Under the pieces are notes generated by a model. The model worked only from the letters and a program-made list of their open reading frames with translations, did no database searches and was not told the DNA's origin. From Tubulanus polymorphus (taxonomy: Eukaryota > Animalia > Nemertea): 64,000 bases of DNA. Made by a program: the position numbers and the translations under genes. The stretch is taken from NCBI RefSeq assembly GCF_964204645.1, contig NC_134032.1, forward strand, positions 13,814,275 through 13,878,274, read 5' to 3'. This document shows positions 3,266-64,000 of this stretch, one piece after another. How positions within the stretch are numbered: position 1 is the first letter of the stretch; the number at the start of each line of letters is the position of its first letter.

Positions 3266-3300
<35 letters not shown>

Positions 3301-28992: not shown

Positions 28993-31900
28993 TTAGCAAA
29001 CTTGACACGATTTTCGGCAGTTAGGTAACATATATCGCGGATTCTTTTTGCATTCGCCGATATTCGCCCAATAAGGACACTGGTCGTTATTGTCCAAACA
29101 ATTCGGATTGGCTGTCGTGGTCGTCTGACCCGGGCAAGTACCTGTTTTGCAAAAATGACGAAAAAACGTTTGAAAATACTAGATAATCGAATATTCAAAT
29201 CTACTTCTATGAATAATGACGATTTCATCGAAACTTACCGCAAGAGACCCGACAATTCGGTAACATGTAAGCCGGATTCTTCTTGCATTCTCCAATATCG
29301 GCCCAATATTGACATTGCGAGTTGTTATTCACACAAGGCGGCTCCGGATCTTTGGATTTAACCACAGCCCCGGTGAGAGGATCGGTCCAAGTGGTATCTG
29401 ACGATATAACGATTTAATAATAATTGTAGGTTATCAAATCGTTGACGCATGAGCCTGGTATACGTCAACGGTTACAGTTGGGAATACAGATTTGAGAAAG
29501 TTTAAAATTCGAATATCGTTTTAAAGGGGAAACTGCTCTTAGATTAACACAATAGGTGGGAGGAATGAGATGGGGGGGGGGGGCTACGTGCTGTGTTTAG
29601 GGCTACAATCGAGGACTAACCTTTGTGCTGACACTTGCATTCCTTGTTCAAAAATGATTCTCCTCGGACACATTTTCCTTTCAAATTCGCCGGACAATGA
29701 GCTACATATAAAACATATGATCATCATTTATTATCGAAGTTACGCACAAACTTTTTTCTATGATAAATCGAACATATTCATATATGCATGTATGAAGGAA
29801 TTCAAAACATGAAATTAGAAAGAAAAATTGATTTAAGAAGGGCTGTTGGGGTATGTCTGGACGCAATTCAGACATTGGCGTCGCAGTAGACCGGGTGCGC
29901 AGGTACATGCGCAGCTTTCCGAACGAAAACTGGCGGCACCAATCAGATTGCTCGTTGTATAATCGTTGAGGCAAATTTCAAGGAAGAACTATAAATGGGA
30001 AAACCCGGGCTAAAATAAAACGGGATATCTGATTGGCTAAAAATCACATCATCTGAACTGCGCATGTATCTGCGCACACGGTCGATTATGGCAGGGTTTC
30101 GTGCCGTGGCAATCTCGATGCCATCAGGTTCGAATCCCTGCTGGGGGAGGATGGTGCAGGGTTGTGTTGTAATAATTACCGTCACATTGATACATGAAGT
30201 TAGCCACTTGCGTGTCGGACCAAGCTAAAGTCTTTTTATGCCAAGTGTCCTGAATCAGATGTTCTTTCGATGGATCTTTAGCTTTTATCGTCTGCTTGCC
30301 TTTATCTGAAAACGCCTGAAAAATAAAAACTATTTCACGGAGCGGCGGAAGCTTATCTAATTTGGTCCGACCATAGGAATTTTTTTTCTCTTTTTTTAGT
30401 CTGATAGCTTGGCAGTCAGAAACGACCAATCAATTTTTGTTGACAAAATTTGTCACAAAAAAACCTGCTAGAAATGTATGGATTGAGAATCGGACAAATT
30501 GTCACCTATAAAACTGAAGCGGGTGTGTGATTTGAGCTAAAATTTGACCCTAGCAGTAGGGTTACTCGAATACGAATACGAATATTTATTACACTCCAAC
30601 CATTTCCATGGTATATGGAGGAAAAGAAACGGTATTTACAATTATTTACAAAAACAGTAGATAAAAGCACTTTGAAACATAACAAACGTTATATACAACA
30701 TACTATTTACACGCACTACCGGAGGGATCTATATACATCCAGACCTAATTTGATAAATTTAGCAAGTTTAAAAGTTGGATTTTTTAAAACATCAAGATTC
30801 CGAAAGGTATTTGAATTTAGGTAGCTTTCACGGAATACGATAAGTAATTTACAGTCAAAAATGAAATGTAGTTCGTCGCCTAAAACGTTACAGGTGGGGC
30901 ATAATCTATCGGTTCTCGGTAGATGGAGATTTGACAATTTATTTACAGGTAGGAGATAAGATACTCGACACGCATACACATGCGACTCCTGGTGGACATA
31001 ATCATTAAATCGACGCTCCAGGAATATCTGATACTAACCGTTGTACCGTAATGCATAATACCCAAATAATCATAATGAACTCCATAATTATTCACTTCAC
31101 TCCAGGGCAGTTTATTAAACCAAACTCTCCAGGCGGGATTGACATTCTCGTAAATAATCTCTAAATATTCATCTCTGTCCGGAAGTTGATGTTCGTGTAC
31201 CCAGCCAATCGCGTGACCTAATTCGTGAATGACGGTACCCTTATATCTACATCCGGGTCCTAGATTCAAGGGTTGTGCACCCCCGCTCATTCCTAGATGT
31301 GAATTGCATCTGAAAATAAAACATCATTAGAAATTATCGATAAATATATATAATTCAATAATTGATGATTATTTGATATTTGTTCTGATGAATTTATTTT
31401 CGCAGTGATCGAAATTTTTTCGCACGGTTTGTCAAAATGGCATCTATTCTATTGTGTGAATTGGACCAGCCGTCTGACATGAGATTAGAGACAGCCTATG
31501 GGGAGTGACTTGCGCAGGATTCAGCATAGTGTTCTGAACCCAGTTCACAGTTTTGAACCCAGGGCCCAATTTCACAAAAAGTTTAAGCCTAAAACAGTTG
31601 AATTGTTTTCCTCATTGATGATATGAAGTAACCACTAGCGGTTACACAAAAAAATTTAATTTAAACATTTAATTTCTTGTGAAACTGGGCCCAGCAGTTC
31701 CACAGATTTGAGCCCAGATTCGCAGTTCCGGAGCCCATTCCACAATTCTGAGACCTGGTTCAACAGCTCTGGGCCAGGTTTCCGCAATTCTGGACCATGT
31801 TCCACTGTCTCGATAAAGAATAACGTCGGAAATGGACTAATTTAAATGCAACCGATAATGTGTGGAGGTGGGGGTCCTGAGGAGGTTGTGCGAGGTGTGC

Positions 31901-47000: not shown

Positions 47001-50000
47001 TTAGTAGCCAATAAGATTCTGGAGTCAGTTACATAGTTCTGGGTGTTAAAATGACTCGGGGGTGGGGGGGGTAGGGTCGGGGGGGGATTGAGATCATTAG
47101 AACTTAGAACAATAACCACACTCAAACATGGTGAACGGATAATCAGATAAAAACCAACTATCTACAAATTAAAAGAATTTAAAAACAAGAATCTATTGAT
47201 TCGAACAATCTAAAATATATAAAATACCTCACTCAAGGAATTATGTGTAATCACAAAGAAAAATCAGGGAAAACTGGACGGAAAGTGGCGCCACCCTGTG
47301 ATAAGATTAAGATTTCAAATCTCTGATTTTATTCAGGATCGAAGAACCGCGATTGATAAAGAATTTCTCAACTGGTTGAAAGAATGCCACGAACAGCAAG
47401 ACAAACAGATCAAATTCTGCGGTTTTCAAGGTCACGTTGTGCGCACCGATTTGCCGAAAAATAAGCAGACGCCGTGGGCGGAATACGACAGTATCGAGTG
47501 GGACGGGAAGATGTTTAAAACCGGGCAACTGGTAAGTGGAAAGATTCCCACGTGCTGGGGCGGATCCAGGGACTAATTTTGAAGAACTTGTCAAACCCCT
47601 AGAGGGCACTTCGATGTCTGAGAAGGAAACATAACTTGTAACTGGACCTCAAACCAGTCTCACAAGTCTCCAGGGGCCGGTTCCATAGTCAGGGCTTAGA
47701 CTTAAGACCGTTCTTAAACCAACTTAGTTCTATAGCCAATCTAACAAGTTAAGACCTGACTTAAGATTTAAGACCACTTTTGGTCTTAAATCTTGACTAT
47801 GGAACCGACCCCTGAATCTGCTCCTGACACGCCATGAGTGGAATACTCTATTGCCACAGTAGTTGACGTCCTTCTGCACACAAGCAACACCTGGTGGATG
47901 CTTGGAGTAGATCGCAAAATCCTGCTGAATGAATCATATTTATTTTATTTTCAGACTAAGATCGTTAGGACGGTACCGATCACGTACGGAAAGATAAAAC
48001 GGTTTTTATTATACGGAGATCACGAGGATGATGTATTCGCGACGGGGGGCGATATGGAAATCTCACAGGAACCGTCTGCTTTATATGACGAACTGAAAAT
48101 ATTCCCGCTCGTTAAATTGGACCGACACGCGACGCAGACGGCTTGTCGTAAATATATCGAAGAGGAAGAGGCTCGGTGAGTTGATTTAAAAATTGAACAG
48201 TCGCCTGTTCTCGATTGTCAAAATCATGTGGCCACTGACCTGTCAAATATGGAAAACTCAGGGAATCAGAAAAAAATCTAGAAAGGGAAACTCCAAGGGA
48301 TTTGTATATGGATGGAATGCAGACACCTTGGATGATGTGAATTTGGATGATGTTATTGACCATGTTTTTCTTTATCTATTATTTTTTATTTATTAAAAAT
48401 GAATAAATTGTAGCATTTTAAACCTAGAAACTCCTCAGATTCACTCAGGGAATATTGCGTTTTAACATCGAAAACTTAGGGTTTTGTAAATGGTCAGAAA
48501 GTGGCGCCATCCTGTGCCCCGGTATCGTACTTAAATTTATCATAACCGGTAATCGGTACGTTTTATAGGTTACCGTTTCAACTGGAACTCGATTGGCCGG
48601 AGGGTAACGCCGTATCTGATGGAGAAAAACGCCCGGCCGGGCAAACAATCGGCGATATTAAAGTATCGATTCTCAATCGGAAGGGTGAAAATATCGGAAA
48701 GTTACCGGGCACGACCGGGCAACAGAAAAAACTCCTCGTCGAATTGAAGATCATCTGGCACGGTAGGTCTTCAAAAACATTTCATTGTCAAGAATTCTAT
48801 ATCGATCAATTATCTATCGACGGAACTGTTCGCTTGTTTGTTTCACAGCGCCATCTGGTGATGAAGTGATCGTATCTCATATAAGTCAACACGGTAAAAG
48901 TTGGCCGTATTGGTTCCGTAAAATGGGTGAGTACGTCTGCTGACCTTGAGAACACTTGTTTCTATTAGCGTAATAAAGAAAGGTCATTTGTAGTCATTTT
49001 GACTGCCTGGTGGCTATCTTTATTTGTCTTATACATATGGCAGTTTTCAGTTTGATTTATTTTCAATCATGTTGTGCTTCTTTTTTGTTGCAGAGAATAT
49101 TAAAAATCTAGGCGAACACACCCTTCAGTTACAAGTCGTTCTCAACGAAAGTGGAGCTAATATTTTCGCCGGGCAAGAACTACCGTCGCATAAACTGACG
49201 TTTACTGTTACAGGTAAATAGAATTTATTCACTTCATAGAATTCATTCTCTTTTATTTTCCCTGCGGGGTGTTTGAACTGTATTACGTGATCCTTGCGCC
49301 GTACAAGAACTATTTATCATTGTTATTACTATTACTTCATAGACGCGAAACTAATAAATTTGAAAAAGTATTTACTTTTGGAAAAGTTAAGGATTAGACC
49401 TCGATTAGTGCTTACTTCTCGGGGAAAGTGTCGAAAAGTACAGGGAATTTCTACTGTCAGACGACTGAAACATTAATAGCCAAGAATGAATTTGATACCC
49501 AGGACCCAGTTCCACAGTTCTGAGTTAAGATTTGACCCTGGGTTAAAACATTGAAAATGAAATATAAGTTTAACTCAGAGTTAACTCTAACTCACAACTG
49601 TGGAACTGGGTCCTGTCTGTCTCCAACAGGGTTTTAAAGACAGGAATTGAACAAGGTTGAAGCTGTGTCTTGACGTGACAACGCGAAAAAAATTTCATTC
49701 GTCGCATTGTCATGTAGAAGTTTTTGATTGTTTTTTAAACAGAGGCGTCAGCTCAGAAGTTTACCGTAGGTTTATTAGACGGTCCATTCCGTATCGGTAC
49801 GACGTTCAGTATTCCGCTCGAGTTCCAGGATGAGTACAATCACGCTACAAAACCAGATAAAAATAACAAACCAACTCTACACGCTACGTGAGTATACATC
49901 AATCCCCCTATGACATCATCGTTGGATCGATCTATGTATTGACCATTACAAAAATGATGACTTACATGAATCTCCCTATGACATCATCATTGGATCTATC

Positions 50001-53000
50001 TATGTATTGACCATTACAAAAATGATGGCTGCATCCAAGAATCCCCTTATGACATTATTAAATTGACCTCATCCCAAAAAATGTGGCTCCCTCATAATTC
50101 CTTAACTCCCCCTATGACATTATAAATTGATCTAAAGCTTATTAAAAAAAAAAATATGGCTCCCTCCTTAAGTCCCGCTTTGACATTATCAAAATGATTT
50201 AAAGTCCTGCCAAAGAAGATAATTCATTCCAATAATCGGGCTATGACTTCATCAATTATCTTAAGTGAAATAGAATGTTATATAGAAAACATGGCTACCA
50301 TAAATCCCCCTATGACATCATCATCAAATTGATCGTTGTACAGAACGTTCCAAAATAGATCGATTAATTCCTTAATGACCGCACCAATCTGCAGCCTACA
50401 GACCGTGCTACCTCATTAATCCCCCCCTGTGACGCGTTCGATTTTACAGAGGTCTCGAATTGACTTACGAAAAAACGGAACTCCGTGGAAATGCGCTGAT
50501 AATCAAAAACATCGTCGCTATGGGTACGGTTCCGATCAGCACCGGTAAAAACTTCAATTTGATCATCCGCGTTCCGAATCTGGCCGACGATTCGCAAACG
50601 TTGAAAATTCGTATGTTACCGGGACCGCCGCGTAAATTACTGGTGGAGCCGACGGCTGATACGATCGAAATAGAGAATTATTCAAATCTGGAGTTTAGAG
50701 TCGCTGTACATGACGTCGCGGGTAACATCACCTGTCAACCAAAACTTAAAGCTGTTTGTAAGGTACGTACCTATATCATGTGGATATATACCTATATCTT
50801 GTGGAGCGGTGTGGCCGAGCGGTTAGAGCGTTCGGCTCTGGGAAGCCAGGTCGTGGGTTCGAACCCCGTACATTGCCGTAATGTCCTCGGGCAAGACACT
50901 TGATCCTCATCGTCTCTCTCCACCCGGGAGTAAATGGGTACCTGGCACGATAGATGACTCTTGAGGGCTTGTTAGCAGTTCGGTGTTACTTCTCCCCAGG
51001 GAAAGATGACTGATACATGTTAGAGTATAAAATTGGCCGGGGTAATAATATCGAAAAATGTGAAGCGCTCTGAGCAGCCTGGCTGGATTAAGCGCTATAT
51101 AAGACACATATTATTTTTATTATATTATTATCATTATAATTATCTTTATGATTATATTATTATTATTTTTGTTATTGTTATTATTATTATTATTATCAAT
51201 GTTATTATTACTAGTGAGTTACAGTAGTTGCTATTGTTATTATCCTTGTATCCTCATCAATTATATCGTGTTCTTATTAAATCATGCACGGGCATCACCC
51301 CTCCTCATTAGGTACAGCCCTTAGGGCTTGGGGATATCCTACTTAAATGTATATATTCAGTAATCATGTGTAATAATTGTTATTAATATGTTATTATGCA
51401 TTTGAGAACATTTTTTCATTCATTAAAACAAATGTTAAGATCATTTTGGATCTGTAATCAAACTTTGTCTATTCATGCGCATTTACGAACTGTCTGCTTT
51501 TGTTGATATTTACAGTTCACTGGTGCAGCTAATATCCCGTCATATTCGGTTGATCTGTCGGGCAGCGGTCAGGGTGTTCTCACCGGGGACTGTATCGTTC
51601 TGCCGAAACTAAAAGAGCCCGTTCAGATGAAAGCAAAAATTGACTTACAGGTAAGAAATAACGTCCGTTTAGAAAGAATCGGATTCGAGTCCTGAATTGC
51701 GAGTCACAGGGGTCAGATTGTTTAGAAAATTGTAATAAGATTTTGAAAAATACCTAAAAGAAATCATGAAAATATGTGTCAAAATATTTTGATCCTTTTT
51801 TATGCCACTGTGGAACTCTGAATTTATGCACAATCTGTGTTAAAATTTAAGAAATTATATTTTTTTATCCATCTCGATTTTGATCGGTAACTGCTTATGT
51901 TACTGGCATTCTATCTCAACTTTAAAAAATGTGAATAGAATTATCTGAAAATTTGTCGTGAATTTTTATCAATCTGATCCCTGCAGTTAGATTTGACTGG
52001 GTGGAGTTTCACTTGTTTTGATTGACAGTTTGAGCGTATGAATATTACAGGGTTTGAAAGTAGTTCCGTCTGTTGAGAAGTTGTTGTTTATTTACCCGAG
52101 CACGCGAGCAGCCGGACTGCAGCTGTTTTATAAAGATAATGATCGAACGTTGTCGATTCGACCGGGCCAAGAAATACACGCGATCGCCGGTGAAAATATT
52201 CGCGGACTCAGTAAGATAATTTTCATTATTCGTGCAACTTTTGTGTCTCTCGTACAGGATTTGACTCTTTGAGTTTAAAGATTGAAAATCGTTTACTAAT
52301 TTTAACTCAGGGGTTATCTCAAACTCAGGGTCCAGTTCCACAGTTCTGAGTCAAGATTTAACTCTGAGTTAACCCATTGAAAATGAACTTTAAGCTTCGA
52401 CTCTGCCACAACTCTAAAACCAATTGCACAGGCGGGTATTTGGATGTTTTGAAGGGGTTGACCTGAAAATTGGAACGGTCGCTTTATTTTAAAAGGGCAG
52501 GATTGGCAATGTGACGGCTGCAACGTGAAACGTTGTGAGGGTTCTGGTGACCATAGAAAATTTAGGATACAAGGGGGCTTTTCTAGGCCTTATCAGGTCC
52601 CATTTGTCTTTTTACGAAGGCATTTCGGAGGACTAATATTCTAATCTTGAACAGGCTGGACCAGTCCAACCCTCGGCTCAATCCGCCTTTGAATTGGCAC
52701 AATCTATTACTGTGTTATAAAATTTTTTTGATTTTTTCGCAAAATAAAAACGACTGTTTGTGAATTTCTCGCAGCATTCCGTCTGATGGACGAAGCCGGA
52801 CGTACGATCGAAATGGATTTGGACGTCGCGTTGAAGGTGCGCGTGAGCTGGACTCCGAAATTACTGAAAGACTACGTTCTGAAAGGACTTCTGCCGGATA
52901 TTAAAGTACCGAACTCAACGCAGGACACGAAATATTGTCACATCACGTTCATCGACGGGTCCGGTTTAGATTTCTCGTTCAGCGTCGTGCCCGTGCCCGG

Positions 53001-56000
53001 CGACGCAGGTATATTGAAATGTAAATGTCAGGGAACGAACGTCATGAGGCTCGGAGAGATTTTGTCGTCGGAAATCACGATCACGATTAAAGATAAACAT
53101 GGAAACGAAATAAAAGGAGTAAGTAGCAAAAATCATCTTCATCTTACTGAATCTGTCGAGTCATTAAGGTTGAGTTAACCGGTGATTAGTTGAAATGGTG
53201 ACGATGAAAAGTTAATCGTTGCTGTATTTATATCAGGGGCTGCAGTTACTCAAAATCTGGTTACAGTTTAACCCTTTCAGTGCTGACTAATTAATACCCT
53301 ATAGTGCTGGAGATAATTTGAAAATTCCACCTTAGTGTGTTGAATAACGGGAACACCACTATAGTGCGTCTACATCGCGGCGCGGTGTATCGGTAGTTAC
53401 TAATATTTCACTATGTTTGACAGTTGCTGCCAACTTTCAAGAGAGATAATTAGTAATTACATCAATACACCGCAGTGCGGTGTACTAGCAAAATCTATCA
53501 CTGATTTATACACCGCACTGCGGTGTAGACGCAATGAAAGGGTTAACTAGCGGATAGTTGACATAGTGACAATAAAAAGTTCATTGTTACTACGGCATTT
53601 ATCCACCGTCATCTGAAACCAACTTTTGAGCGACTGATGCATTTGAGCCCCAGATTGATGTGGAAAATGTGAAGAATCACAAGTAATTGTTATATTTAGA
53701 GTATTTTTAGCGTATTTTTGTTTGTTTTTCAGTTGGGACCCAATGATTTGGCCGAACTCGAGATATTCGGCGAAGGATTAAACGTTTCTGAAGTGGAGCG
53801 AGATTTATCCGAGCTGGCGAACGGTTTCGTAATTCGAAATATCAAATTCGAAGGGGGTCAACTGGGAACGCGTGAGGTCAGCGTGCGATGGCGGGAACTG
53901 ACCGACTACGTCCGTCTGCAGATGACCGCCGGCCGTCCGAAATCGGTAACGTTTCCCGGCTGGAATCTCGACAATCCGTGGAACGTGTACGCCGATCGCA
54001 AACTAACATGGCCGCTGATCGTACAACTGATCGACGAAATGGGTAACCCTACGACCGATCCGGACTCGAAAATAACCATCATAAAAGACAACGCGTTGAA
54101 GTTGACGCCGACGCCGATGCCGACTCGAGCCGATTCTCGAGGACAAGCAAATTTCGGTCATATGTTCATCTCGGGAAAACGCGGTTTATATCAGATCCAG
54201 GCTAAAGCTCTCGTCGGACGAACGGTTCTCATGGGAACCAAGTTGAAAATTAACATACAGCCGGACGCGACGAAACCTGTCAATCTCGAGGTGCAGTACG
54301 ACGCCCCGCCCACTTATATAGTCGGAGAACCACTACCAGGTGAGGAAAAATAGTCAAATGATTGTTGTCAGTGACAGCTAGGAGTATCCAGTCACAGTCG
54401 CAACTTAGGTTATTAGACTGGCTGCTCTACAGTTGTAAGTTGTTAACAGGGCCCAGTTTCACAAAAAAGTTTAACTCAAATTCTGGTGTAACTGCTTTTG
54501 GTTACTTCATTTCTTCAATGAGGACATCAATTCAAACTTTTTAGGCTTACACTTTTTCGTGAAACTGGGCCCTGGAGTTAAATCAATTCATTTGCAATCT
54601 GTTAATTGTTAATTCCGAATTGTGGAACTGGATCCTGAGTTCTGACTGGCTTAAACCGGTTCCACCACTCTTGATTAAGTTTGATTCATGCTTATTCGAT
54701 GTTAACTCATGATTGTGGAACTGGTCGGGTGTTTTGCCTGAGAACCTGGGTCCTCGATCATGCTGTAATAATTGAATATAGACTAATTCGAAAAATATGA
54801 TTTTTAGCCTCAATTCATTGAATACCAGTAATAAGAGGTTGTTTTGATGTGAATTTCAGTGTTTACCGTGAAGATTATCGCTGAAGATGACTCGCCCATG
54901 TCGTCTGCTCAAGCTGCGAACCTCACTATGAAACTGTGGAAGGCTAACACATACATGCCTAGACCACCCCTCGATGTAAGTAGAATCTACCAAAACTTTA
55001 CAAATCAGCGGGGAAAATAAGAGAAATCACGATTTATTTCTCTCCCTGCAGAGATATCAGGGAATTCTTACTTTCTTGAAGAAAAGCCACTGGGAGTTTT
55101 TGGTGTCTTGTTATTTTTGCTGGTGACGAGTGCCACAAGGAAACTCTTGATAAGAAACAACCCCCACTAAGCGTATCTTAAAGTTCTATCAGGGAATTTG
55201 AATTTTTGGTATCTTGTTGTTCTTGCTGGTGACGAGTGACACAAGGAACCTCTTGATAAGAAATAGCCCTCACTGAGGATATCTTATGATTTAATCAGGG
55301 AATTTGAATTTTTGGTGTCTTGTTGTTCTTGCTGGTGATGAGATGACACAAGGAATCTCTTGATAAGAAACAGCCCTCACTGAGCGTATCTCAAAGTTCT
55401 ATCAGACTTGTTATTCTTGCTGGTGATGAGTGACACAAGGAACATCTTGATAAGAAACGGTCCTCACTGAGGATATCAGGGAATTTTGGTTTCCCTGATG
55501 TGTTAGAACCCTTAATTTTCATTCATTTCTAGTTTGAAGTTGCCTGCGAGTTAATTAGAATTACTAACAGTTTGTGAAACCTGGGCCCATAAAAAAACTG
55601 ATACTTTCTTTTAATGCAATTTCTAATCAACAGGCTGTGTCTTACTCCCCGGACGCGAGACACAAGAACGAAAAAAATGGCACTTTTACATTCAGGTAAA
55701 TCATCAAATAGTCGGGTTTAGGGGAACTGTGTGTTATTGGGTCATGATTTTGATATACATAAGTTGAAGACATAGTTCATTCTATTTGATCGATTCGCCA
55801 GACATAATGAAGACCCCCTCGCTGCCGCCCACCAGCTATCCCAGTAGCCGACTCAAGATCTTTAGTTAATTTCCTATGAACTTACATCTAGAATATTAAT
55901 CTCTAAGGTTTTTCGCCTCTGCCGAATGGGAATCCTGGCTTGAATGATGAAAAAATTGAAAAACTCGAATTTATTTTTTTTTTATCACAGTGTGCAGAAT

Positions 56001-58298
56001 TCAAACTTTCCAAGAATCATTAGTTTGGACATATGTATCGACAGTTCACTCTTTCTTCAAAAAATGATTTCATCTCACAAAGGGAATTTGAAAAAAATTT
56101 TCTTTTCCTCCTGCGAAATGATGCCCCGTAAACCAAGCTATTAAAAAAAAGGCCTTAGTCACGTCCTCAAAACTCTTGATTGGTCTCAAGGGTTCAAATA
56201 TAGCGGGATTTTTATTCATCGTTCATCATGGATAGATTTCTATTGAATCCGAGAAGAAATGCGGCCATCGTTGTCCTAATGCACACTAGTGACACCTGGT
56301 GAATCCTCGCTTGCCACAAGCGAAATCCTTAATTGCTAACATTTAATGTAGAGTCCGTATTGTTTTTTTTTTCGGCTAGGCATATCCTGAGTGCAAATGC
56401 AAATGTTGAAATTTTACCGGAGATTGATTTTATTTTGTAGCGAGAAAGTGATTCCGGAGATTTGTGGCGGGTCGAGTATAATGTTCGTTTATCAGGACGC
56501 AAAATACGAAGTGGTCAGTCGTCAAATAGCGTTAAACGTCGAACCGGCGCCACCTGCTGTCATTGTACCGTATCAAAACATCGGTACTCCGACCGTGTCG
56601 AATACGTCGAAGGCGGCAAGTCGCAGCCTGATCAGAAATCTCAAACTTGAGTTACACGTGAGTCGAATTTCCCTTTTGAGAACAGATGGCTGCCTCCATT
56701 GATCACCCTACGCTATCATTGAATTGATATTAGAACACACAACTGCTTCCACAATCCCATCCCCTTACGATGTCATCAAATATGCCCCCCATTCGATCTA
56801 TAATATACCTGTCCGCCGTGTCCAGAAATGATGGCTGCCTCCATAAATCACCTGATGACATCATCAAATAAATTCCAATCATAATTCACATCTGACCATC
56901 AATACATGTATACTGTGAAAGTGGTTGCCTTCACTTCAGGGAAATTACTGACCAGGAAAAACTGGAAAACTGAAAAATCTCAGGGAACTTGACAAGTTTT
57001 TCCATAACTTGGAAAACCCTGGAAATTTGGAGATGTAATTGACCATGTATTTCTTTATTAATACATGATTCAATGAATAATGAATAAATTGTAACATTTT
57101 AAACCTTCAAATTTCTCTGATTCACTCATTGAATTTTGTGTAATCACATGGAAAAATTTAGGGGACTCATAAACGGGCGGAAAATGGCCACGTGATGTCG
57201 CATGGTTCGTGGCTTGCGGTAAAATATCTAATAATTGTTTGATATTTCAGGATAAATACCATAATGTAACGGGTAGCGATGTAGACGGTTATATATCGGT
57301 GGAGATATTGGCACCAGACGGTGTCGAGGATATTCCTACGTTTGTAGGTAACACCAGAACGTTGCAGGTGCCGTTACAGCACGGTTTCGCTAATATATCG
57401 GTAAATATTAACTATTTCATAGAATAAAATCTTATACTCTGAAAGGAAATGAGTCCGAAAAGGTTTCTGATTTATTTTATCATGATAATCTTCAGGGCCC
57501 GGTTTTATAGACTGGTATCAACTTTAACCCAGGGGTGCTAGCTCAATTCATTTTCAACTTAGTTATGAAGATAATACCAGTCTATAAAACCGGGCCCAGG
57601 GCCCAGTTTCACAAAAAGGTTTAACTCTTAAATCGATTTGATTTCTTCATTAATTCAGTTTATCTTAAATCGATTTAGGGCTTAATCCTTTTTGTGAAAC
57701 TGGGCCCAGGATTAAATACTTAGTGACAAAAAGAAATATGAAAATTAGTTACAGAGTTCCATTACCCAGAGGTTTTATTTTCTTTATCTATCTTGAGTAA
57801 AAGAAGACTTTTTGGCTATCCTTCAAAAGAGTTTAAAATGGTTACTTAATGACCACGAGGAAAAACAGGAAAACATGAGTCATTTTAGAGACTTTGTTTT
57901 AGAAATTTTATTGTGTTGTGGTGTCACTTCAAACCGATCGGCATTCTATAGCTTTGAGACTTTGAAATGTCCATTTATGGCTGTTGAACTAAGTGCAGAA
58001 TTTTATTTAGTTCATGTCTAATACGTAAACAGATCACCTCCATAGTTCTGATATCTAACTCACTCGCGGTATTCTAACTCAGCTGTGGAACTGGGTCCTC
58101 TATTCAACAGACTTCGCTTAAAATTCAGACGCGATTAAACTAATTAATGAAATTGTTAATTACAGAGTTTAACGATCCAGGAGAATTCACCCGGCGTAGA
58201 TGGCCAGGAATTCACGCTCGAATTGAAAGTTGTCAGTAACGATATTCCTAAAAACCAGTCGGTTCCACCGTATACAATACCATTCCTGTTCTATAATG
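35021..58298 (+). CDS. SMCHD1: Structural maintenance of chromosomes flexible hinge domain-containing protein 1 orthologue (3'-incomplete in window)
   Basis: About 29 exons, including 35021-35194, 35728-35806, 36503-36661, 37155-37237, 38042-38205, 39239-39362, 40023-40142, 42149-42362, 46009-46132, 47337-47531, 53733-54339, 58166-58298. Diagnostic peptides: [43 protein letters not shown] (GHKL motif I), IDNGKGM (motif II), [20 protein letters not shown] (motif III), [54 protein letters not shown]. The last visible exon ends [10 protein letters not shown] at a GT donor, just before where the coiled coil and hinge are expected. Confidence 0.95.
36670..37025. repeat. About 45-bp tandem array (AAGACCAGTCTAAGCTCATTTTGGTTCTATAACCAATCTAACAACT)n
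   Basis: About 8 units. The unit matches the internal segment of MITE family C. Confidence 0.85.
38697..38890. mobile_element. MITE-like imperfect palindrome
   Basis: AAAATGTTTCCTTGAGCAGGTAGT near 38747 pairs with ACTACCAGCTCAAGGAAACATTTT near 38822, and the outer arms also pair. Confidence 0.6.
39500..39990. repeat. About 100-bp tandem repeat family; second array at ~55080-55490
   Basis: Unit containing GTGGCACAAGGAACCTCTTGATAAGAAAC...CCTCACTGAGGATATCTT...ATCAGGGAATTTGAATTTTTGGTGTCTT, about 4-5 copies at each locus. Confidence 0.85.
40276..40383. mobile_element. MITE family B (GACCCAGTTCCACAGTT...AACTGTGGAACTGGGTC); copies at ~40715-40822 (inverted) and ~49503-49612, partial at ~52330
   Basis: Near-identical elements of about 110 bp with TIRs and CWG flanks. 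Confidence 0.85.
49900..50335. repeat. Degenerate tandem repeat family with core TCCCCCTATGACATCATC; related copies at ~56690-56870
   Basis: Core recurs about 7 times at roughly 60-70 bp spacing. Confidence 0.7.
50801..51210 (+). mobile_element. tRNA-derived SINE with CORE-like central domain and L2-like 3' tail
   Basis: A box TGGCCGAGCGG; B box GGTTCGAACCC; central GTCCTCGGGCAAGACACTTGA...CTCTCTCCACCCGGGAGTAAATGGGTACC; 3' AAGCGCTCTGAG...GCGCTATATAAGA followed by (ATT)n. Confidence 0.85.
53272..53542. mobile_element. piggyBac-like MITE (TTAA target, CCCTTTCA termini); diverged copy at ~41092-41504
   Basis: TTAA|CCCTTTCAGTGC ... GCAATGAAAGGG|TTAA. The copy near 41 kb shares the internal sequence and carries a nested family A MITE. 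Confidence 0.8.
57496..57706. mobile_element. Two different Harbinger-like MITEs inserted back-to-back at one CAG site
   Basis: CAG-[GGCCCGGTTTTATAGAC...GTCTATAAAACCGGGCC, 57496-57596]-CAG-[GGCCCAGTTTCACAAAA...TTTTGTGAAACTGGGCC, 57600-57706]-CAG. Confidence 0.85.
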
Positions 58299-58311
58299 GT
58301 AAGTACAACAC

Positions 58312-58985
58312 TAACTCTTCTTACATGCCGCAGTAGGCTCAATGTTTTTATCTCTCCTCACTTGCCGCAGTAGGCTCAATGTTTTTATCTCTCCTCGACA
58401 GTAGGCTGAGTGTTTCTACGTTCTCCTTACATGCCGCAGTAGGCTCATTGTTTCTATCTCTCCTCACATGCCGCAGTAGACTCAGTGTTTCTATCTCTCC
58501 TCACATGCCGCAGCAGGCTCAATGTATTTATCTCTCCTCACATGCCACAGTAGGCTCAATGTTTCTAACTCTCCTCACATGCCGCAGTAGGCTCAGTGTT
58601 TCTATCTCTATTCACATGCCACAGTAGGCTCAATGTTTCTAACTCTCCTTACATGCCGCAGTAGGCTCAATGTTTCTATCTCTCCTCACATGCCGCAGTA
58701 GGCTCAATCTTTCTATCTCTCCTCACATGCGACAGTAGGCTCAATGTTTCTATCTCTCCTCACATGCCGCAGTAGGCTCAATCTTTCTATCTCTCCTCAC
58801 ATGCCGCAGTAGGCTCAATGTTTCTAACTCTCCTCACATGCCGCAGTAGGCTCAATTTTTCTAGCACTCCTCACATGCCGCAGTAGGCTGAGTGTTTCTA
58901 GGTTCTCCTTGCATGCCGCAGATGGCTCGATGTTTAAGTGAGAGAGATGTATGTTCTATGATGCTCACTTGCCGCAGTAGGCTAA
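58312..58985. repeat. 37-bp minisatellite (CACATGCCGCAGTAGGCTCAATGTTTCTATCTCTCCT)n
   Basis: About 17 units between the last visible SMCHD1 donor and the stop codon of the antisense LRR-ZU5 gene. Confidence 0.95.
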
Positions 58986-58988
58986 CTA

Positions 58989-60984
58989 TCATACGTACAG
59001 ATTATGAAGCATGTGTTCCACTGATTTACAGGCTTTATATTTACACTTGGCCTTCGTTAGAATCGCTCCTTTCCTGGAATACAAAAACCTTCGAGTCTTT
59101 AATTTAGAACCTTTGAAATAATAATAATAATAATAATATATTTTCTCATATAGCGCACCCCTACATGGTAATCGGTGCGCTTACAAATACAAATAAACAA
59201 ACTTTTAAAAGTAAATATTCTGTTGCAGTTTATAACAATGCGTTGCTCAGTAACTGTATAAATCGGTTATATTTCTTACCCTGAGAAATGCCATGTTTGT
59301 ATCGTGATATATCCATTGAGCGCTCGATATCCCGAACTGCACGGGATACACGTATTATCGTCGCGATATGTTAACACATGTAAACGGCCTTTCTGCGGCA
59401 TAGGTGGCGCCGGTATAGTTACTAAAACCTACAAATACATATGAGCGGCCATTTTAGAAGCGTATGATGGGGAGTAGGGTTGATGGAGGGGAGAGGGGAA
59501 TGAATGTGTTGGGGTTGTAGTTTATACAACCTGCTGAGAGGGGAAGAGGCTAGGTTAAGTGAAACTATATATTCAGTACAATTACCTGCTCGTTAAAGTT
59601 ATAATTCCTACTCTGCCACAGGTGCACTATATGACCGACTGAGATGATATTATCGATCATTTTATTTCGAAATTTCAATTTCAACAATGATTCCTGGTCG
59701 ACTTTCTCCAACTGAAATAGATAAAACATCTGACGTTTAGTTTAATGTGGAGTCCAGTAGCTACTATAACCAACTTCCGGGGCCCAGTAGCTACTATTAC
59801 TATCCTCTGGAGCCCAGTAGCCTGTGTAGGATCCCGTGCGATAACCAACTTCTGGGGCCCAGTAGCTACTATAACCAACTTCTGGGGCCCAGTAGCTACT
59901 ATAACCAACTTCTGGGGCCCAGTAGCTACTATAACCAACTTCTAGGGGCCCAGTAGCTACTATAACCATTTCCAGAGATTCATTTAAAATCCGACCTCGG
60001 GTCGGAAAAGAAAAAACAATTCTCTACCTGCATGATGATATCGGTAGCTGCATCAACCGCGTTCACCGGGAAATACAGTTTAATATTCGGGTCGAGCGAA
60101 CATTGAAACAATCCTCCGGCCGGAGTGACCGTGAACTTATCCGGTTTCATACGGATCAAACTACCCCTGAGATCGGCTGCGTACGGGTAGACGTCGCGGG
60201 GCGATTCGTTCTGCAACGCCGGTATCAACTCGTTCACGGTACCGGTAGCCACGCCGTGCGATGATGTCATCAATCCGGTGTCGTCTAGTATAGCGGTTAT
60301 ACTGGAAATAAATGTGAATCAGAGATTTAACAGTTTCCTCGAGTTCGTGCATTAGTAAACATCGTTAAAACCGTTTTGATGTCAAGTTCGGATAGAAATA
60401 CAAGTCATCGGATAAGTCATTGAATAGAAATATAAGTCAGGGTCTGGTTTATATCAATCATTGAATCAATAGACAATCAATCAATCATTAAATGATTGAT
60501 GATAAGTCATTGAAGTCGTCTCCATCTTTCAGTCATAATTTGTTTTACCAATTCACTTTTAGTTAAGTCGTCATTTGGATAAGTTGTTACACTACTTAAG
60601 TTGTGTCTCTAGTGAATTGTATTTTCAATTCAATTCAAGTGTAAGTAAATGTACTTAGAAGCGTAAGTCGTTGTGTGAATAAATCAATAAGTGGAGTGGT
60701 GTGGCTGAGTAGTTAGAGTGCTTGACTCGTGGGTTCGAACCCCGTACATTGCGGTAGTGTCCTCGGGCAAGACACTTGACCCTCTATTGCCTCTCTCCAC
60801 CCAGGAGTAAATGGGTACCTGGCCTGATAGATGACTCCTGAGCGCTTGTTAACAGCTCGCTGTTACTTTTCCCCAGGGAGAGATGACTGATACATGTTAG
60901 AGTATAAAATTGGCCGGGGTAATAATACCGAAAATGTAAAGCGCTCTGAGCAGCCTGGCTGGATTTAGCGCTATATAAGACACA

Positions 60985-61018
<34 letters not shown>

Positions 61019-64000
61019 AATCATCAACATAATCGTCGTCCTAACTAGTACACGACTTAGACTTAGATTTAGTTCATTTTCAATTCGTCGCTCTCAACAG
61101 ACACAACTTGTCAAACTTTACTCTAACTACTTAAAAAACACGTACTGAAAAGGTCTGAATTAATAATGAATCGTGTGAATGAAATCGATATTGTTTAATT
61201 CGGGGTTAATGATGTAATAGCATGTTATACATAAATATAATCAGTGGCAGCCGTGGAGTCATGAGGGAGTTAGATCTCCCCCTGGGGAGTTAAGGGGTGC
61301 AGGTATCTATCTAATTAAGTGGGATGTTTATTTGTTATTTATGGTACCGAGTGCCTTTGCATAATTTAGCGATAATTTTCATTACCCTCACCTGCCCCCT
61401 TCACACTTTCAGCGGTATCAACCATCGATAATAAAGTTGTTAAAGATAAAACTACCTCTGTATAAACCCTCTGTCTAAAAACAAAATAACCTCGGTAAAT
61501 CCCAGTTGTACAGTCTTTAATCTTTAGACTGGTCATCTAGTTGTTAGATTGGCTATAGAACTGAAATGAGCTCGGACTGGTCTGCGTTACTACGTTAGAT
61601 TGGCTATAGAAGCAAATGGAGCGGAACTCTTGAACTGGTCTCCTAAACCAATCTCGTTTTAAAAACCCAATCTCTTCCGTTTGATGTTTTTCTATTCAAT
61701 CGTTAATTTCTCGATGAAATTGAACCAGGGTCTGGTTTATATCAATCATTGGACAATCGATCAATCATTAAATGATTGACGAATCAGTTCGTTCAGCTCA
61801 TGGCTCAGATCTGCTTCTTGTCAAACGGAAATCTGTATATCAGTCTCGGTAATCATTTTAACCATGGAACCAATTTTACTGTCCAAATTAACCCGATCAA
61901 AGTAAAGACAGATGACAACTAGGGTATGGTTTTGTACAAGCCCTGAGTCTTACGATACTATCAATGTTGAATCCCTGTAAGGGCGGGATAAGGAGTGAAA
62001 TTTATCTATAAATCAAAGTATATCGTGGTGACTGGTTTATATGAAACGTGGGGTTGTGTGTGGGTTATTACTTACTCAGGTCTACTTGTACGCAGGAAGT
62101 TGCCTCTGTGTGATATGACTGGTTTCAGTAATTGATGTTGTAATAATGATTCTAATTGATTACACAATCCTAGTAACGTATAATCAGTCCGGACTGTGTC
62201 GTACCAGCCGCCGCCGCCGTTATTACGCAATATACTCTTATCCGATTCCACGGTGAACTGTCTCGATGGGCTTTTCTCGACGTTCCCGAGTTTGTCTCCG
62301 GGTTTTAGCAACATCCAGTTGTCATTTTCGGGCATTTTCCTCAAATTGTGTCGATTGACGATCAGGTCGTTAGGTGGCGCCACCGCTGCTGGGTATCGAT
62401 GTCGATCCCAGCGTTCGATCGCGTCGTGACGACGACGTAAATCGTGCGCTCGATTACGATCATTGTTGCCGTCGTCGTCACGGTGATTGGTGTCGCGCGG
62501 CGGTAAAGCGGTTCGTCCGTTGGTGTGGTGATGAGGCTGTAGGTGGCGCCGGCGTCGTCGTGGAGGCGACCGGATGTATCTACGCGTTCCGGTCGCGCTG
62601 TTATCCGTCAGATAGGGGGAGCTGTCGCTGTCGTGTCCCGCTGCCTTCGTACCGTTAGGTTTTTGAGTCGGAGCCGAGTCCCACGAGTCGTAACCGCTGA
62701 CGTCTCGTCGCGATCGCATCGTGCTCCGTTTCCCGGAAACGACCGGCGTTTTTCTCATCGTCTCGCCGTCGGAAACAGCGCCCCCTCGGTCGCTCCGTTT
62801 GATAACACCGTCGCGGTTTTCCCCGATCGCGCGTCGGCTACGATTAACTACTTCCACGTCGACAGCGTCTTCGTCCTCCGTCGACTCGTTTCGTCGTAGA
62901 TTCATCGACCGGTCGAGCACAATCGGTCGATTCGAGATTTTGTTACCTTTGATATTGAGATATTCGAGTTTGACGAGTTCGTTGACGGATTGCGGCAGTT
63001 CGGTCAAACGATTATAACCGATATCGAAAACGCGAAGTTCCTTCAACAATTCGACGTCTTTCGATAGATATCGAATTCGATTTCGACTCAGTTTCAATTG
63101 TTGTAAATTCGTCAGGTTGCAGACGCCGAGCGGCATGTTCGCCAGCCGGTTACGATTCAGATTCAAATATCGTAGTCGACGCACCTGTATCAACGCGCAG
63201 TTCGTGATCTGATTTTCGGACGCGTTTAGATATTCGAGGTCGTCGAAATTACAGCTTAAACTCGTGAGTTTATTGCGTTCGACGCGCAGTGATTTGAGTT
63301 TGGTGAGTTTCGCCACGTGAGTCGGTAACGATTTGATCGCGTTCGACGCCAGATTCAAACGCGCGAGATTCTTCAACGCGAGCACGTCGTGCGGGAACGC
63401 GTCGAGGTGATTCGCGCGCAAGTCGAGATCGACGAGCTGTTTCAGATTCTGGATCTCGCGCGGTAGTCCGCGTAGCTGATTGCCGCCGACGTTCAGCGTT
63501 ACGAGCGTTTTCAACGCGACGACCGTCGCCGGGAAAACGTCGAATCGGTTTTCGGCGATATTCAACGTCTTCAAACGTTTCAACGTTTGCATTGTCGCCG
63601 GCAGTCGCGTCAACCGATTCGCTTGTAAATCGAGAATCTTCAGATTCTCCAACCGCCCGAAGTCGACGACCAGATTCTCGAGTTGATTACGCGCCAGTTT
63701 CAGAACGCGTAGGTATTTCAGCTGACCGATTTGCGCGGGCAAAGCGCGCAGTTTATTGCACGATAAGTCGATTTCGCATAAATGCGCGCAGTTGGAAATA
63801 GTTTCGGGAATCGACGTTATTTGGTTGCGATGCAAATCGAGCACGCGTAATTTGCGCAGGTGCCCGACGTAAACGGGCACGGTTAGTATTCGATTGCGCG
63901 GCGCGCGTAGTACCTCGACGCGCTGGAAGTTGAACGCCTCGAGAGGTATCTCGCGAAGGCCGCGATCCGACAGGTTTAACTCGGTCCAGCCGCGTTGATT
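58989..64000 (-). CDS. LRR + ZU5-like (PIDD1-like) protein, 5'-incomplete, apparently nested antisense in an SMCHD1 intron
   Basis: A large exon open from the window edge (64000) to 62076, encoding about 15 LxxLxLxxNxL repeats plus an R/S/D-rich linker. Then phase-consistent exons 60301-60028, 59711-59586, 59428-59280, 59073-58989. These encode FTVTPAGGLFQCSLDPNIKLYFPVNAV, ISVGHIVHL, VLVTIPAP, TIQTWHFSG and a tail of about 30 aa ending HNLYV-stop. Confidence 0.85.
59750..59970. repeat. 30-bp minisatellite (CCAGTAGCTACTATAACCAACTTCTGGGGC)n in an intron of the LRR-ZU5 gene
   Basis: About 7 units. Source of four periodic ORFs. Confidence 0.92.
60691..61016 (+). mobile_element. Second copy of the tRNA-derived CORE-like SINE
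   Basis: Closely matches 50801-51110, with a short deletion between the A and B boxes. Ends in (ATT)n. ATAAATCA occurs near both flanks (possible target-site duplication). Confidence 0.85.

What the first reader, a model, noticed from the sequence alone, without database searches (positions are those of the whole stretch)
58989..64000. PIDD-like LRR-ZU5 protein with an HFS self-cleavage motif but no death domain
Seen in sequence: about 15 LRRs, a charged low-complexity linker of about 290 aa, then four small exons that the ORF track mostly misses. They splice in frame into a ZU5-like domain ending TIQTWHFSG (HFS codons 59290-59282). The stop comes about 30 residues later (SGKGAILTKAKCKYKACKSVEHMLHNLYV). 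Established: PIDD1 has LRR-ZU5-ZU5-UPA-death domain and autoproteolyses between F and S of HFS motifs to release its signalling fragments. Inference: this looks like an unusual architecture in which autocleavage would release or retain only a short basic, Cys-containing peptide. It could be a decoy or sensor for PIDDosome-like signalling, or a separate self-processing LRR sensor family.
Basis: partly seen in the sequence, partly recalled or inferred. Interest (0 to 1): 0.8.

Follow-up and report, generated by a model that had tools for sequence, protein, structure and literature searches.

The report
Ribbon-worm LRR–ZU5 protein lacking death domain
This is a real, intact gene for a protein with about 15 leucine-rich repeats and one ZU5 domain that stops shortly after a PIDD-style HFS motif. 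It belongs to an undescribed family shared by ribbon worms, molluscs, annelids and flatworms, but HFS itself is not conserved across that family.

Summary
On the minus strand, one large exon (about 15 LRRs, a charged linker and a conserved helix motif) is followed by four small GT-AG exons. They tile co-linearly onto annotated mollusc proteins and onto a 160-residue Lineus longissimus protein. HFS sits at 59290-59282 and the stop at 58991-58989.

- **The short end is genuine.** L. longissimus stops at the same codon position. Full-length mollusc and annelid relatives end at or within 7 residues beyond it. No ZU5, UPA or death-domain match lies in the window.
- **It is not the PIDD gene.** The same genome has a separate, canonical PIDD-like gene on contig C4, with LRRs, two ZU5 domains each carrying HFS, and death domains.
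- **The ZU5 fold is confirmed.** AlphaFold2 gives pLDDT 94, and the best structural match is ankyrin-B ZU5 (TM 0.80). HFS lies in the loop before the last strand. The tail forms that strand plus a conserved helix (KCKYKAC), so it is part of the fold.
- **HFS is not a family feature.** It occurs in both ribbon worms, Owenia and Elysia. About 8 of 28 relatives lack the Ser/Thr nucleophile yet keep the tail.

Self-cleavage is possible here but untested. No RNA data were available. The scan had noted only this same stretch before.

The parts
62076..64000 (-). Exon 1, the part inside the window. The coding sequence starts at an ATG 180 bases beyond the window end (L001:2681). The donor GTAAGT begins at 62075, in phase 2.
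   Evidence: Open frame. Its relatives include Lineus longissimus P0001 at 55% identity, E 8.6e-146.
62897..64000 (-). Array of 15 to 16 leucine-rich repeats (residues about 65-428).
   Evidence: Pfam LRR_8 E 6.6e-49 and LRR_14 E 2.1e-37. Fifteen regex units at a spacing of 20-23 residues, mostly 23.
62186..62896 (-). Charged, poorly conserved linker rich in Arg, Asp and Ser (residues 429-665).
   Evidence: Composition. This region does not align between orthologues and differs in length between them.
62102..62185 (-). Conserved pre-ZU5 motif, DYxLLGxCNQxExLL...PVxSxxG (residues 666-693), predicted to be a helix.
   Evidence: Conserved in nemertean and mollusc orthologues. tblastn hits at 62188-62057. 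It is helical but of low confidence in the Mercenaria model.
60028..60301 (-). Exon 2: the end of the linker and the first strands of ZU5 (FTVTPxGG...).
   Evidence: GT-AG borders. Aligns to orthologues. P0134 hit at E 3.7e-12.
59586..59711 (-). Exon 3: the ZU5 helix and central strand.
   Evidence: GT-AG borders. P0134 hit at E 2.3e-14. This exon is fused with the next one in L. longissimus.
59280..59428 (-). Exon 4: ZU5 strands ending in TWHFS. The donor GG|GTAAGA is in phase 2.
   Evidence: It is 76% identical to P0134. P0134 hit at E 4.5e-23. L. longissimus has the identical splice-site sequence.
59282..59290 (-). HFS tripeptide codons (CAT TTC TCA).
   Evidence: Read directly. The equivalent residues 130-132 of P0134 lie in the loop between strands 123-128 and 133-139.
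58989..59073 (-). Terminal exon. It encodes the last ZU5 strand, the KCKYKAC motif, an amphipathic helix and the stop TGA at 58991-58989.
   Evidence: The tail is conserved in Nemertea, Mollusca and Annelida. L. longissimus stops at the same codon position. P0134 hit at E 6.7e-6.
58311..58935 (.). Tandem array of a 37-bp unit (17 copies) directly downstream of the stop, in the presumed 3' UTR or flank.
   Evidence: Tandem Repeats Finder score 889.

Best explanation
This is a single-copy, intact gene for a cytosolic protein of about 912 residues.

**Architecture, in order**
- A short basic N-terminus.
- 15 to 16 LRRs of the SHOC2/LAP type.
- A disordered charged linker.
- A conserved helix motif.
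- One ZU5 domain.
- A conserved 27-residue tail.

It belongs to an undescribed family found across spiralians: Nemertea, Mollusca, Annelida and Platyhelminthes. It is not the PIDD orthologue, which lies elsewhere in this genome.

**Shown here**
- The tail is the last beta-strand of the ZU5 sandwich plus a capping helix that carries the KCKYKAC motif. The protein therefore ends where its ZU5 module ends.
- HFS occupies the loop where PIDD, Nup98 and the NLRP1/CARD8 FIIND cut themselves.

**Inferred**
- The protein most likely acts as an adaptor. The LRR solenoid would bind a partner, and the ZU5-plus-tail module would bind a second partner or the cell cortex, as ZU5 does in ankyrin and ZO-1.
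- The ribbon-worm, Owenia and Elysia versions may undergo F|S autoproteolysis. I put this at roughly one in three.
- If they do, the two pieces would stay together non-covalently.
- The family's core function cannot depend on cleavage, because several lineages lost the nucleophile and kept everything else.
For: - **Gene model.** Canonical splice sites and phases. Co-linear tiling of the exons on P0004 and eight other mollusc proteins.
- **Single copy.** The 160-residue L. longissimus protein P0134 matches the four exons and nothing else in the genome.
- **Genuine end.**
  - The L. longissimus tail exon stops at the same codon position, with TAA and no GT donor nearby.
  - Full-length Mercenaria, Pecten, Patella, Mytilus, Haliotis, Octopus, Elysia, Owenia and Dimorphilus proteins end at or within 7 residues beyond that position.
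  - Pfam ZU5, UPA and Death searches of the whole genome give no hit in the window.
  - tblastn with orthologues and with the PIDD-like gene finds no further exon.
- **ZU5 identity.**
  - Pfam ZU5 is above its cut-off on orthologues, at 32.8 and 31.0 bits against 21.
  - The family profile hits ankyrin ZU5 in the PDB at E 6e-11.
  - It also hits ANK-ZU5-DD proteins at E 1e-24 to 1e-13.
  - The AF2 model has pLDDT 94.2 and pTM 0.87.
  - Foldseek gives ankyrin-B 4d8o at TM 0.80 and E 1.9e-9, then UNC5b, GAIN domains and the NLRP1 FIIND.
- **Tail is part of the fold.** Strand 133-139 and helix 144-159 have high confidence. The NLA-bearing Mercenaria protein shows the same topology.
- **Separate PIDD-like gene.** L005 encodes LRRs, two ZU5 domains with TWHFS and PHFS, and two death-domain exons.
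- **Taxonomic spread.**
Against: - **No transcript evidence.** The only runs that hold this locus behave as DNA, with no splice joints. The exon 1 to exon 2 junction and the 3' end therefore rest on homology alone.
- **Fold shown on a proxy.** It was predicted for the L. longissimus orthologue, which is 62-76% identical to the window exons. It was not predicted for the window protein, because the spliced protein was not assembled.
- **Adaptor function is by analogy.** No partner, localisation or phenotype is known.
- **HFS may be ancestral.** Its presence in three phyla could mean that cleavage was the original and main function.
Confidence: 0.7

Rival explanations
1. The protein is a self-processing LRR sensor. 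ZU5 autoproteolysis at HF|S frees or exposes a short basic, Cys-containing peptide as the functional output, or the protein acts as a decoy in PIDDosome-like signalling.
For: - HFS lies at the canonical loop before the last ZU5 strand.
- The context TWHFS is the same as in ZU5-1 of the genome's own PIDD-like gene.
- HFS is kept in two ribbon worms that are only 55% identical in the LRR region, and also in Owenia (an annelid) and Elysia (a gastropod).
- Most relatives keep Ser or Thr at the nucleophile position.
- In PIDD1, HFS sites in ZU5 domains do self-cleave (PMC9162469; PMC3210808).
Against: - About 8 of 28 relatives have Ala, Lys or Glu at the nucleophile position: Mercenaria, Mya, Octopus, Candidula, Dimorphilus (2 rows), Pinctada and one unnamed fragment. 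The five of these whose sequence reaches the tail keep it nearly unchanged.
- Phe is replaced by Leu in many relatives. UNC5b has Leu at the position of the buried Phe that CARD8 needs to cleave itself (PMC3210808).
- The piece after the cut is a core strand plus a packed helix, so it would not dissociate on its own.
- There is no death fold or other PIDDosome-binding part.
- Similarity to the PIDD-like ZU5 is marginal.
Confidence: 0.2
2. The 3' end is mis-modelled. The real transcript uses the GTACGT or GTATGA donor near 58995 and continues to a second ZU5, UPA and death-domain exons, which would make this an ordinary PIDD paralogue.
For: GT dinucleotides exist at 58998 and 58994. No RNA data were available to exclude their use.
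Against: - The stop is at the same codon position in L. longissimus, where no GT donor is present.
- All full-length orthologues in three phyla end there.
- There is no ZU5, UPA or Death match anywhere in the window.
- The DNA just downstream is a 37-bp satellite. After that come exons of an SMCHD1-like gene on the other strand.
Confidence: 0.03
3. It is a decaying or non-functional remnant of a PIDD-like gene that lost its 3' half.
For: The domain order, LRR then ZU5 with HFS, resembles the N-terminal half of PIDD.
Against: - All five exons are open with intact splice sites.
- The whole architecture, including the tail, is conserved across Nemertea, Mollusca, Annelida and Platyhelminthes.
- Its nested position inside an SMCHD1-like gene is conserved between the two ribbon worms.
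Confidence: 0.02

Closest known systems
PIDD1 (LRDD): LRR, ZU5, ZU5, UPA, death domain
   Same: Both have N-terminal LRRs followed by a ZU5 domain whose last loop carries HFS. The context TWHFS is identical to ZU5-1 of this genome's own PIDD-like gene.
   Different: - It has 15-16 LRRs, against seven reported for PIDD1 (PMC9162469).
- It has one ZU5 domain, not two.
- It has no UPA and no death domain.
- It is a separate locus from the canonical PIDD-like gene on contig C4.
- ZU5 sequence similarity is only marginal.
- HFS is not conserved within its own family.
Ankyrin ZU5 domains (PDB 4d8o, 3ud1, 6m3q)
   Same: They are the closest solved fold (TM 0.80, E 1.9e-9). They are also the closest solved sequences to the family profile (E 6e-11).
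   Different: Ankyrins have ANK repeats, tandem ZU5 domains, UPA and a death domain. They have neither LRRs nor the KCKYKAC tail.
FIIND of NLRP1 and CARD8 (ZU5-UPA with SF|S autoproteolysis)
   Same: The ZU5 fold is shared (7crw, TM 0.51). The candidate cleavage tripeptide sits just before the long last strand, as described for CARD8 (PMC3210808). In NLRP1 an LRR domain lies upstream of the ZU5.
   Different: Here there is no UPA and no CARD. The C-terminal fragment would be about 29 residues, not an oligomerising effector domain.
SHOC2 and the LAP family (Scribble, Erbin, LRRC1, LRRC7). These are the names that database pipelines gave to the orthologues.
   Same: A long array of 15-16 cytosolic LRRs of 23 residues. 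Automatic names such as 'SHOC-2-like', 'lap4-like' and 'scribble homolog' come from this similarity.
   Different: No PDZ or LAP-specific domains were found. SHOC2 and the LAP proteins have no ZU5 domain.

Membership tests
PIDD1 / LRDD | N-terminal leucine-rich repeats | tested here: met
   Pfam LRR_8 E 6.6e-49. Fifteen units counted.
PIDD1 / LRDD | Two tandem ZU5 domains followed by UPA | tested here: not met
   There is one ZU5-sized module only. Pfam ZU5 and UPA searches of the genome give no hit in the window. Orthologues show a single ZU5 stretch.
PIDD1 / LRDD | C-terminal death domain | tested here: not met
   There is no Death hit on contig C8 near the window. The orthologues end at or within 7 residues beyond the window's stop position.
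PIDD1 / LRDD | HFS autoprocessing motif at the end of ZU5 | tested here: met
   The sequence motif is present at 59290-59282, in the equivalent loop. Cleavage itself cannot be tested with these tools.
PIDD1 / LRDD | Orthology: being the genome's PIDD locus | tested here: not met
   A canonical LRR, ZU5(HFS), ZU5(HFS), DD gene lies at C4:5993001-6003000.
ZU5 domain superfamily (Pfam PF00791) | Sequence match to the ZU5 profile | tested here: met
   Orthologues P0004 and P0003 score 32.8 and 31.0 bits against a cut-off of 21. The family profile hits ankyrin ZU5 at E 6e-11. The window's single exons are too short to score alone.
ZU5 domain superfamily (Pfam PF00791) | ZU5 beta-sandwich fold | tested here: met
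   The AF2 model of the L. longissimus orthologue has pLDDT 94.2. Foldseek gives TM 0.80 to ankyrin-B ZU5 and 0.65 to UNC5b.
Spiralian LRR-ZU5-KCKYKAC family (unnamed; defined here) | 15-16 LRRs, a variable linker and the DYxLLGxCNQ helix motif | tested here: met
Spiralian LRR-ZU5-KCKYKAC family (unnamed; defined here) | A single ZU5 followed by a KCKYKAC tail and a stop 12-19 residues after the motif | tested here: met
FIIND (NLRP1 / CARD8) | ZU5 plus UPA with an SF|S site and a C-terminal CARD | tested here: not met
   No UPA was found and the tail is only 27 residues long. Only the ZU5 fold is shared.
LAP family (Scribble / Erbin / LRRC1 / LRRC7) | 16 LRRs plus LAP-specific domains and usually PDZ domains | tested here: not met
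   Pfam finds LRR families only in exon 1 and in full-length orthologues P0135 and P0136. No PDZ domain was found.

The most novel reading that the evidence does not exclude
In HFS-bearing members (ribbon worms, Owenia, Elysia) the ZU5 domain cuts itself at F|S. That would leave the smallest known ZU5 autoprocessing product: a strand-plus-helix peptide of about 29 residues, held non-covalently. As in NLRP1 and CARD8 'functional degradation', destruction or unfolding of the LRR-ZU5 part would then free this basic, Cys-bearing peptide as the signal. Lineages with NLA, HLA or TAK would be natural non-cleaving variants.
Probability: 0.12. Interest if true: 0.75.

Novelty: new variant of a known kind. 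Interest (0 to 1): 0.45.

Why it matters
ZU5 domains are known from four settings: ankyrins, UNC5 receptors, PIDD and the FIIND of inflammasome sensors. In all of these the domain is followed by UPA and a death-fold effector. In the last two it is a self-cutting switch.

Here the same module is joined to a long LRR array and ends in a 27-residue conserved tail with no effector. This layout is conserved across at least four spiralian phyla, and I found no paper describing it. Database entries carry misleading automatic names such as SHOC-2-like, scribble homolog, lap1 and even 'leucine-rich repeat and death domain-containing protein 1'.

The family also offers a natural experiment on what makes a ZU5 domain cut itself. 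Close relatives differ only in the HFS position (HFS, HLS, HFT, NLA, HLA) on an otherwise conserved scaffold.

For genome annotation, the L. longissimus record splits this gene into two models. One is a partial LRR protein and the other is a 160-residue orphan. The comparison here shows that they are a single gene.

Tried and rejected
- **Pfam on single exons.** There was no ZU5 hit. The exons of 27-91 residues are too short, so I judged the domain on orthologues instead.
- **RNA evidence.** Runs X1-X3 cover introns and exons alike and show no splice joints, so they are DNA-like. The one run guessed to be RNA (X4) laid nothing. The transcript structure is therefore untested.
- **hhalign of the family profile against this genome's PIDD-like ORF.** The result was E 0.004 but probability only 8%. 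The HFS positions line up, but this is too weak to count as evidence of special kinship to PIDD.
- **BLASTP of the Mercenaria ZU5 against the PIDD-like ORF.** Nothing significant was found.
- **Second AF2 model, Mercenaria residues 565-794.** The ZU5 and tail were reproduced. The conserved pre-ZU5 helix had pLDDT of about 50, so nothing can be said about whether it docks on ZU5.
- **Pfam on single exons of the opposite-strand neighbour.** This was negative. Its identity as SMCHD1-like rests on the L. longissimus annotation and on exon-by-exon tblastn.
- **ARAGORN on the very high-copy repeat in intron 1.** No tRNA was found.
- Every search used single exons by reference, and the fold was predicted on the database protein P0134.
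- **Complex prediction not used.** The post-HFS piece is shorter than the 30 residues that tool asks for.


Full report
**1. What is in the sequence**

The minus strand carries one long open frame that enters the window at 64000 and runs down to 62076. Extending the window from the same genome shows a likely start ATG 180 bases beyond the window end. Exon 1 therefore codes for 701 residues plus two bases.

It contains 15 regular LxxLxLxxNxL units, 20-23 residues apart and mostly 23, at residues 88-415. Pfam LRR_8 scores E 6.6e-49 and LRR_14 scores E 2.1e-37. A linker rich in Arg, Asp and Ser follows. A conserved motif, DYxLLGxCNQxExLL...PVxSxxG, lies at 62185-62102.

The exon ends CCT GA|GTAAGT. 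Exon 1 therefore ends at 62076, because the donor GT is at 62075-62074.

Four small exons follow, all with GT...AG borders and matching phases:
- 60301-60028
- 59711-59586
- 59428-59280, ending ...TWHFS, then GG|GTAAGA
- 59073-58989, with the stop TGA at 58991-58989

The HFS codons are exactly 59290-59282. The implied protein has 912 residues.

Every search used single exons by reference.

**2. Is the gene model right?**

No transcript data could be had. The three runs that hold the locus cover introns and exons alike and show no splice joints. The one run guessed to be RNA laid nothing. The model therefore rests on comparison, and that evidence is strong.

- **Relatives of exon 1.** Its best relative is a partial Lineus longissimus protein, at 55% identity and E 8.6e-146. 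Next come bivalve proteins of 735-794 residues that carry a Pfam ZU5 domain.
- **Tiling.** The four small exons tile co-linearly, without overlap or gap, on the C-terminal 200 residues of Mercenaria P0004 and on eight other mollusc proteins.
- **The L. longissimus locus.** The same exons are present. Exons 3 and 4 are fused there, and the last intron sits at the identical TCAGG|GTAAGA site.
- **A split annotation.** The database holds the ZU5-tail exons of L. longissimus as a separate 160-residue protein, P0134. The public annotation has therefore split one gene into two models.
- **Single copy.** P0134 searched against the own genome finds exactly the four exons, at E 4.5e-23 to 6.7e-6, and no second copy.

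**3. Does the protein really end there?**

Four observations speak against it.

- **Same stop position.** In L. longissimus the tail exon stops at the same codon position, 27 codons after the intron-spanning Gly. It uses TAA, and no GT lies nearby.
- **Orthologues end there.** Full-length orthologues from Mercenaria, Pecten, Argopecten, Patella, Mytilus, Haliotis, Bulinus, Candidula, Elysia, Octopus, Owenia and Dimorphilus all end at or within 7 residues beyond that position.
- **No further domains.** Pfam ZU5, UPA and Death searched over the whole genome hit other loci, but nothing in this window. tblastn with orthologues and with the PIDD-like gene finds no further exon.
- **What lies downstream.** The DNA right after the stop is a 37-bp satellite of 17 copies. 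About 690 bases further on lie exons of a gene on the other strand.

I put the chance of a mis-modelled 3' end at about 3%.

**4. Is it a ZU5 domain, and where is HFS in it?**

- **Pfam.** Single window exons are too short to score. Orthologues do pass the ZU5 cut-off, at 32.8 and 31.0 bits against 21.
- **Profile against 1.84 billion representatives.** It finds 17 clusters at E below 1e-30, which are the family. It then finds ANK-ZU5-death-domain and other ZU5 proteins at E 1e-24 to 1e-5.
- **Profile against PDB sequences.** It hits ankyrin ZU5 domains at E 6e-11.
- **Structure prediction.** AlphaFold2 on P0134, with a 26-row family alignment, gives mean pLDDT 94.2 and pTM 0.87. P0134 is 62-76% identical to the window exons.
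- **Fold search.** Foldseek places the model on ankyrin-B ZU5 (4d8o, TM 0.80, E 1.9e-9). Erythrocyte ankyrin ZU5, UNC5b (3g5b), GAIN domains and the NLRP1 FIIND (7crw) follow.

In the model, HFS (residues 130-132) lies in the loop between strands 123-128 and 133-139. [quoted passage not shown]

The tail is not an appendage. Its first part (GKGAxLT) is that last strand. The rest (KYKACKSxE...) is a confident helix at residues 144-159. The Mercenaria protein has NLA in place of HFS and gives the same topology.

**5. It is not the PIDD gene**

The same genome has a canonical PIDD-like gene on contig C4 (L005). A 767-residue open frame there carries LRRs and two ZU5 domains, which end ...KTWHFSLF... 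and ...VPHFSWY.... Two death-domain exons lie downstream.

Similarity between the two genes' ZU5 domains is marginal. BLASTP finds nothing beyond the nine residues around TWHFS. hhalign gives E 0.004 but a probability of only 8%, although it does align HFS on HFS.

The window gene is therefore a separate and old lineage. It is neither a truncated nor a recently copied PIDD.

**6. The family and the fate of HFS**

Named members come from four phyla:
- **Nemertea:** this genome and L. longissimus.
- **Mollusca:** bivalves, gastropods and Octopus.
- **Annelida:** Owenia and Dimorphilus.
- **Platyhelminthes:** Macrostomum, a truncated model.

I found nothing comparable outside spiralians. Beyond the family, the LRR search drops straight to generic LRR proteins and the ZU5 profile drops to generic ZU5 proteins.

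Across about 28 sequences the tripeptide reads as follows.

| Tripeptide | Where it is found |
|---|---|
| HFS | Both ribbon worms, Owenia, Elysia and three unnamed fragments |
| HFT | Patella and one fragment |
| HLS | Pecten, Argopecten, Bulinus, Biomphalaria and one fragment |
| HLT | Haliotis and one fragment |
| QFS, QLS, QLT, MLT, NIT | One sequence each |
| NLA | Mercenaria, Mya |
| HLA | Octopus |
| QFA | Candidula |
| SLA, TLE | One sequence each |
| TAK | Dimorphilus |

About 8 of 28 thus lack a Ser or Thr nucleophile. The KCKYKAC tail is near-invariant wherever the sequence reaches it, including in the NLA, HLA, QFA and TAK species.

My inference is that HFS may well be ancestral, since it occurs in three phyla. 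Cleavage cannot be what selection maintains across the family.

**7. How it most likely works**

*Shown.* The protein has no signal peptide or transmembrane segment that I could see. It has a long LRR solenoid, a disordered linker and a compact ZU5-plus-tail module.

*Inferred.* It is an adaptor in which the LRR binds one partner. The ZU5-tail module would bind another partner or the cell cortex, as ZU5 does in ankyrin (spectrin binding) and ZO-1. That comparison is from my own knowledge.

I rate autoproteolysis at F|S in the ribbon-worm protein at about one in three.
- **For it:** the exact motif lies in the exact structural place, and PIDD1 cuts at such sites (F445|S446 and S588; PMC9162469).
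- **Against it:** the motif is variable across the family.
- **If it happens:** the post-cut piece is a core strand, so the two parts would stay together, as they do in CARD8 (PMC3210808).

Release of a free peptide would need unfolding or degradation of the N-terminal part. That is the most novel reading still open, at a probability of about 0.12.

**8. Novelty and score**

Two full-text searches found no paper on this architecture. Database names for the orthologues are automatic and inconsistent.

I class the gene as a new variant of a known kind: a ZU5 module joined to LRRs, as in PIDD and NLRP1, but ending without UPA or a death fold. Interest is 0.45. The gene is solid and conserved, and it sets up a clean test of ZU5 autoprocessing. 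However, no function is known, and the feature that made the finding exciting is not conserved.

**9. Organism**

My only own evidence is that the best relatives are from the nemertean L. longissimus.

Noticed in passing
window 49726-58303 (+ strand) and L002:5838-9507 (window-equivalent 68838-72507): The LRR-ZU5 gene lies inside an intron of a large gene on the opposite strand. Exons of that gene flank it on both sides. They match, in order, the exons of the gene annotated as SMCHD1-like (HATPase_c_3 plus SMCHD1 Ig domains) that surrounds the orthologue in Lineus longissimus. The nested, antisense arrangement is therefore conserved between the two ribbon worms.
   Followed up: partly
L004:10001-15503 (Lineus longissimus, GCA_910592395.2 OU343010.1): The public annotation splits the orthologue into two models. 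One is a 'partial SHOC-2-like' LRR protein (P0001) and the other is a separate 160-residue protein (P0134) that holds the ZU5 domain and tail. By comparison with the window and with molluscs they are one gene.
   Followed up: yes
L005 (G000:C4:5993001-6003000), minus strand, ORF 4655-6955 plus exons 2945-3286 and 2018-2284: This is a canonical PIDD-like gene of the same genome. It has LRRs and two ZU5 domains, each ending in HFS (KTWHFSLF and VPHFSWY). Two separate exons downstream each match the death-domain profile, so the gene may carry two death domains.
   Followed up: partly
window 58311-58935: A tandem array of a 37-bp unit (17 copies, 86% matches) starts about 55 bases after the stop codon. 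It lies between the LRR-ZU5 gene and the nearest exon of the opposite-strand gene.
   Followed up: no
window 60600-61000 and 61400-61600 (intron 1): These are very high-copy repeats. Summed contig depth is in the thousands, against about 30 in the flanks. One run carries a contig that skips 60472-61751 (1,280 bases), which suggests an insertion/deletion polymorphism of a mobile element within the intron. ARAGORN finds no tRNA there.
   Followed up: partly
window 59749-59968 (intron 2): A 30-bp tandem repeat (about 4 copies at 98% and 2.4 copies at 81%) creates long spurious open frames on both strands between exons 2 and 3.
   Followed up: no
window 30946-31290 (- strand): An exon encoding the catalytic core of an astacin metalloprotease (HExxHxxG motif; Pfam Astacin E 1.6e-25).
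   Followed up: no
P0284, P0285, P0286 (Octopus isoforms): Octopus records list shorter isoforms (626-650 residues) in the same 90% cluster as the 737-residue LRR-ZU5 protein. Alternative splicing may therefore produce forms without the ZU5-tail module.
   Followed up: no
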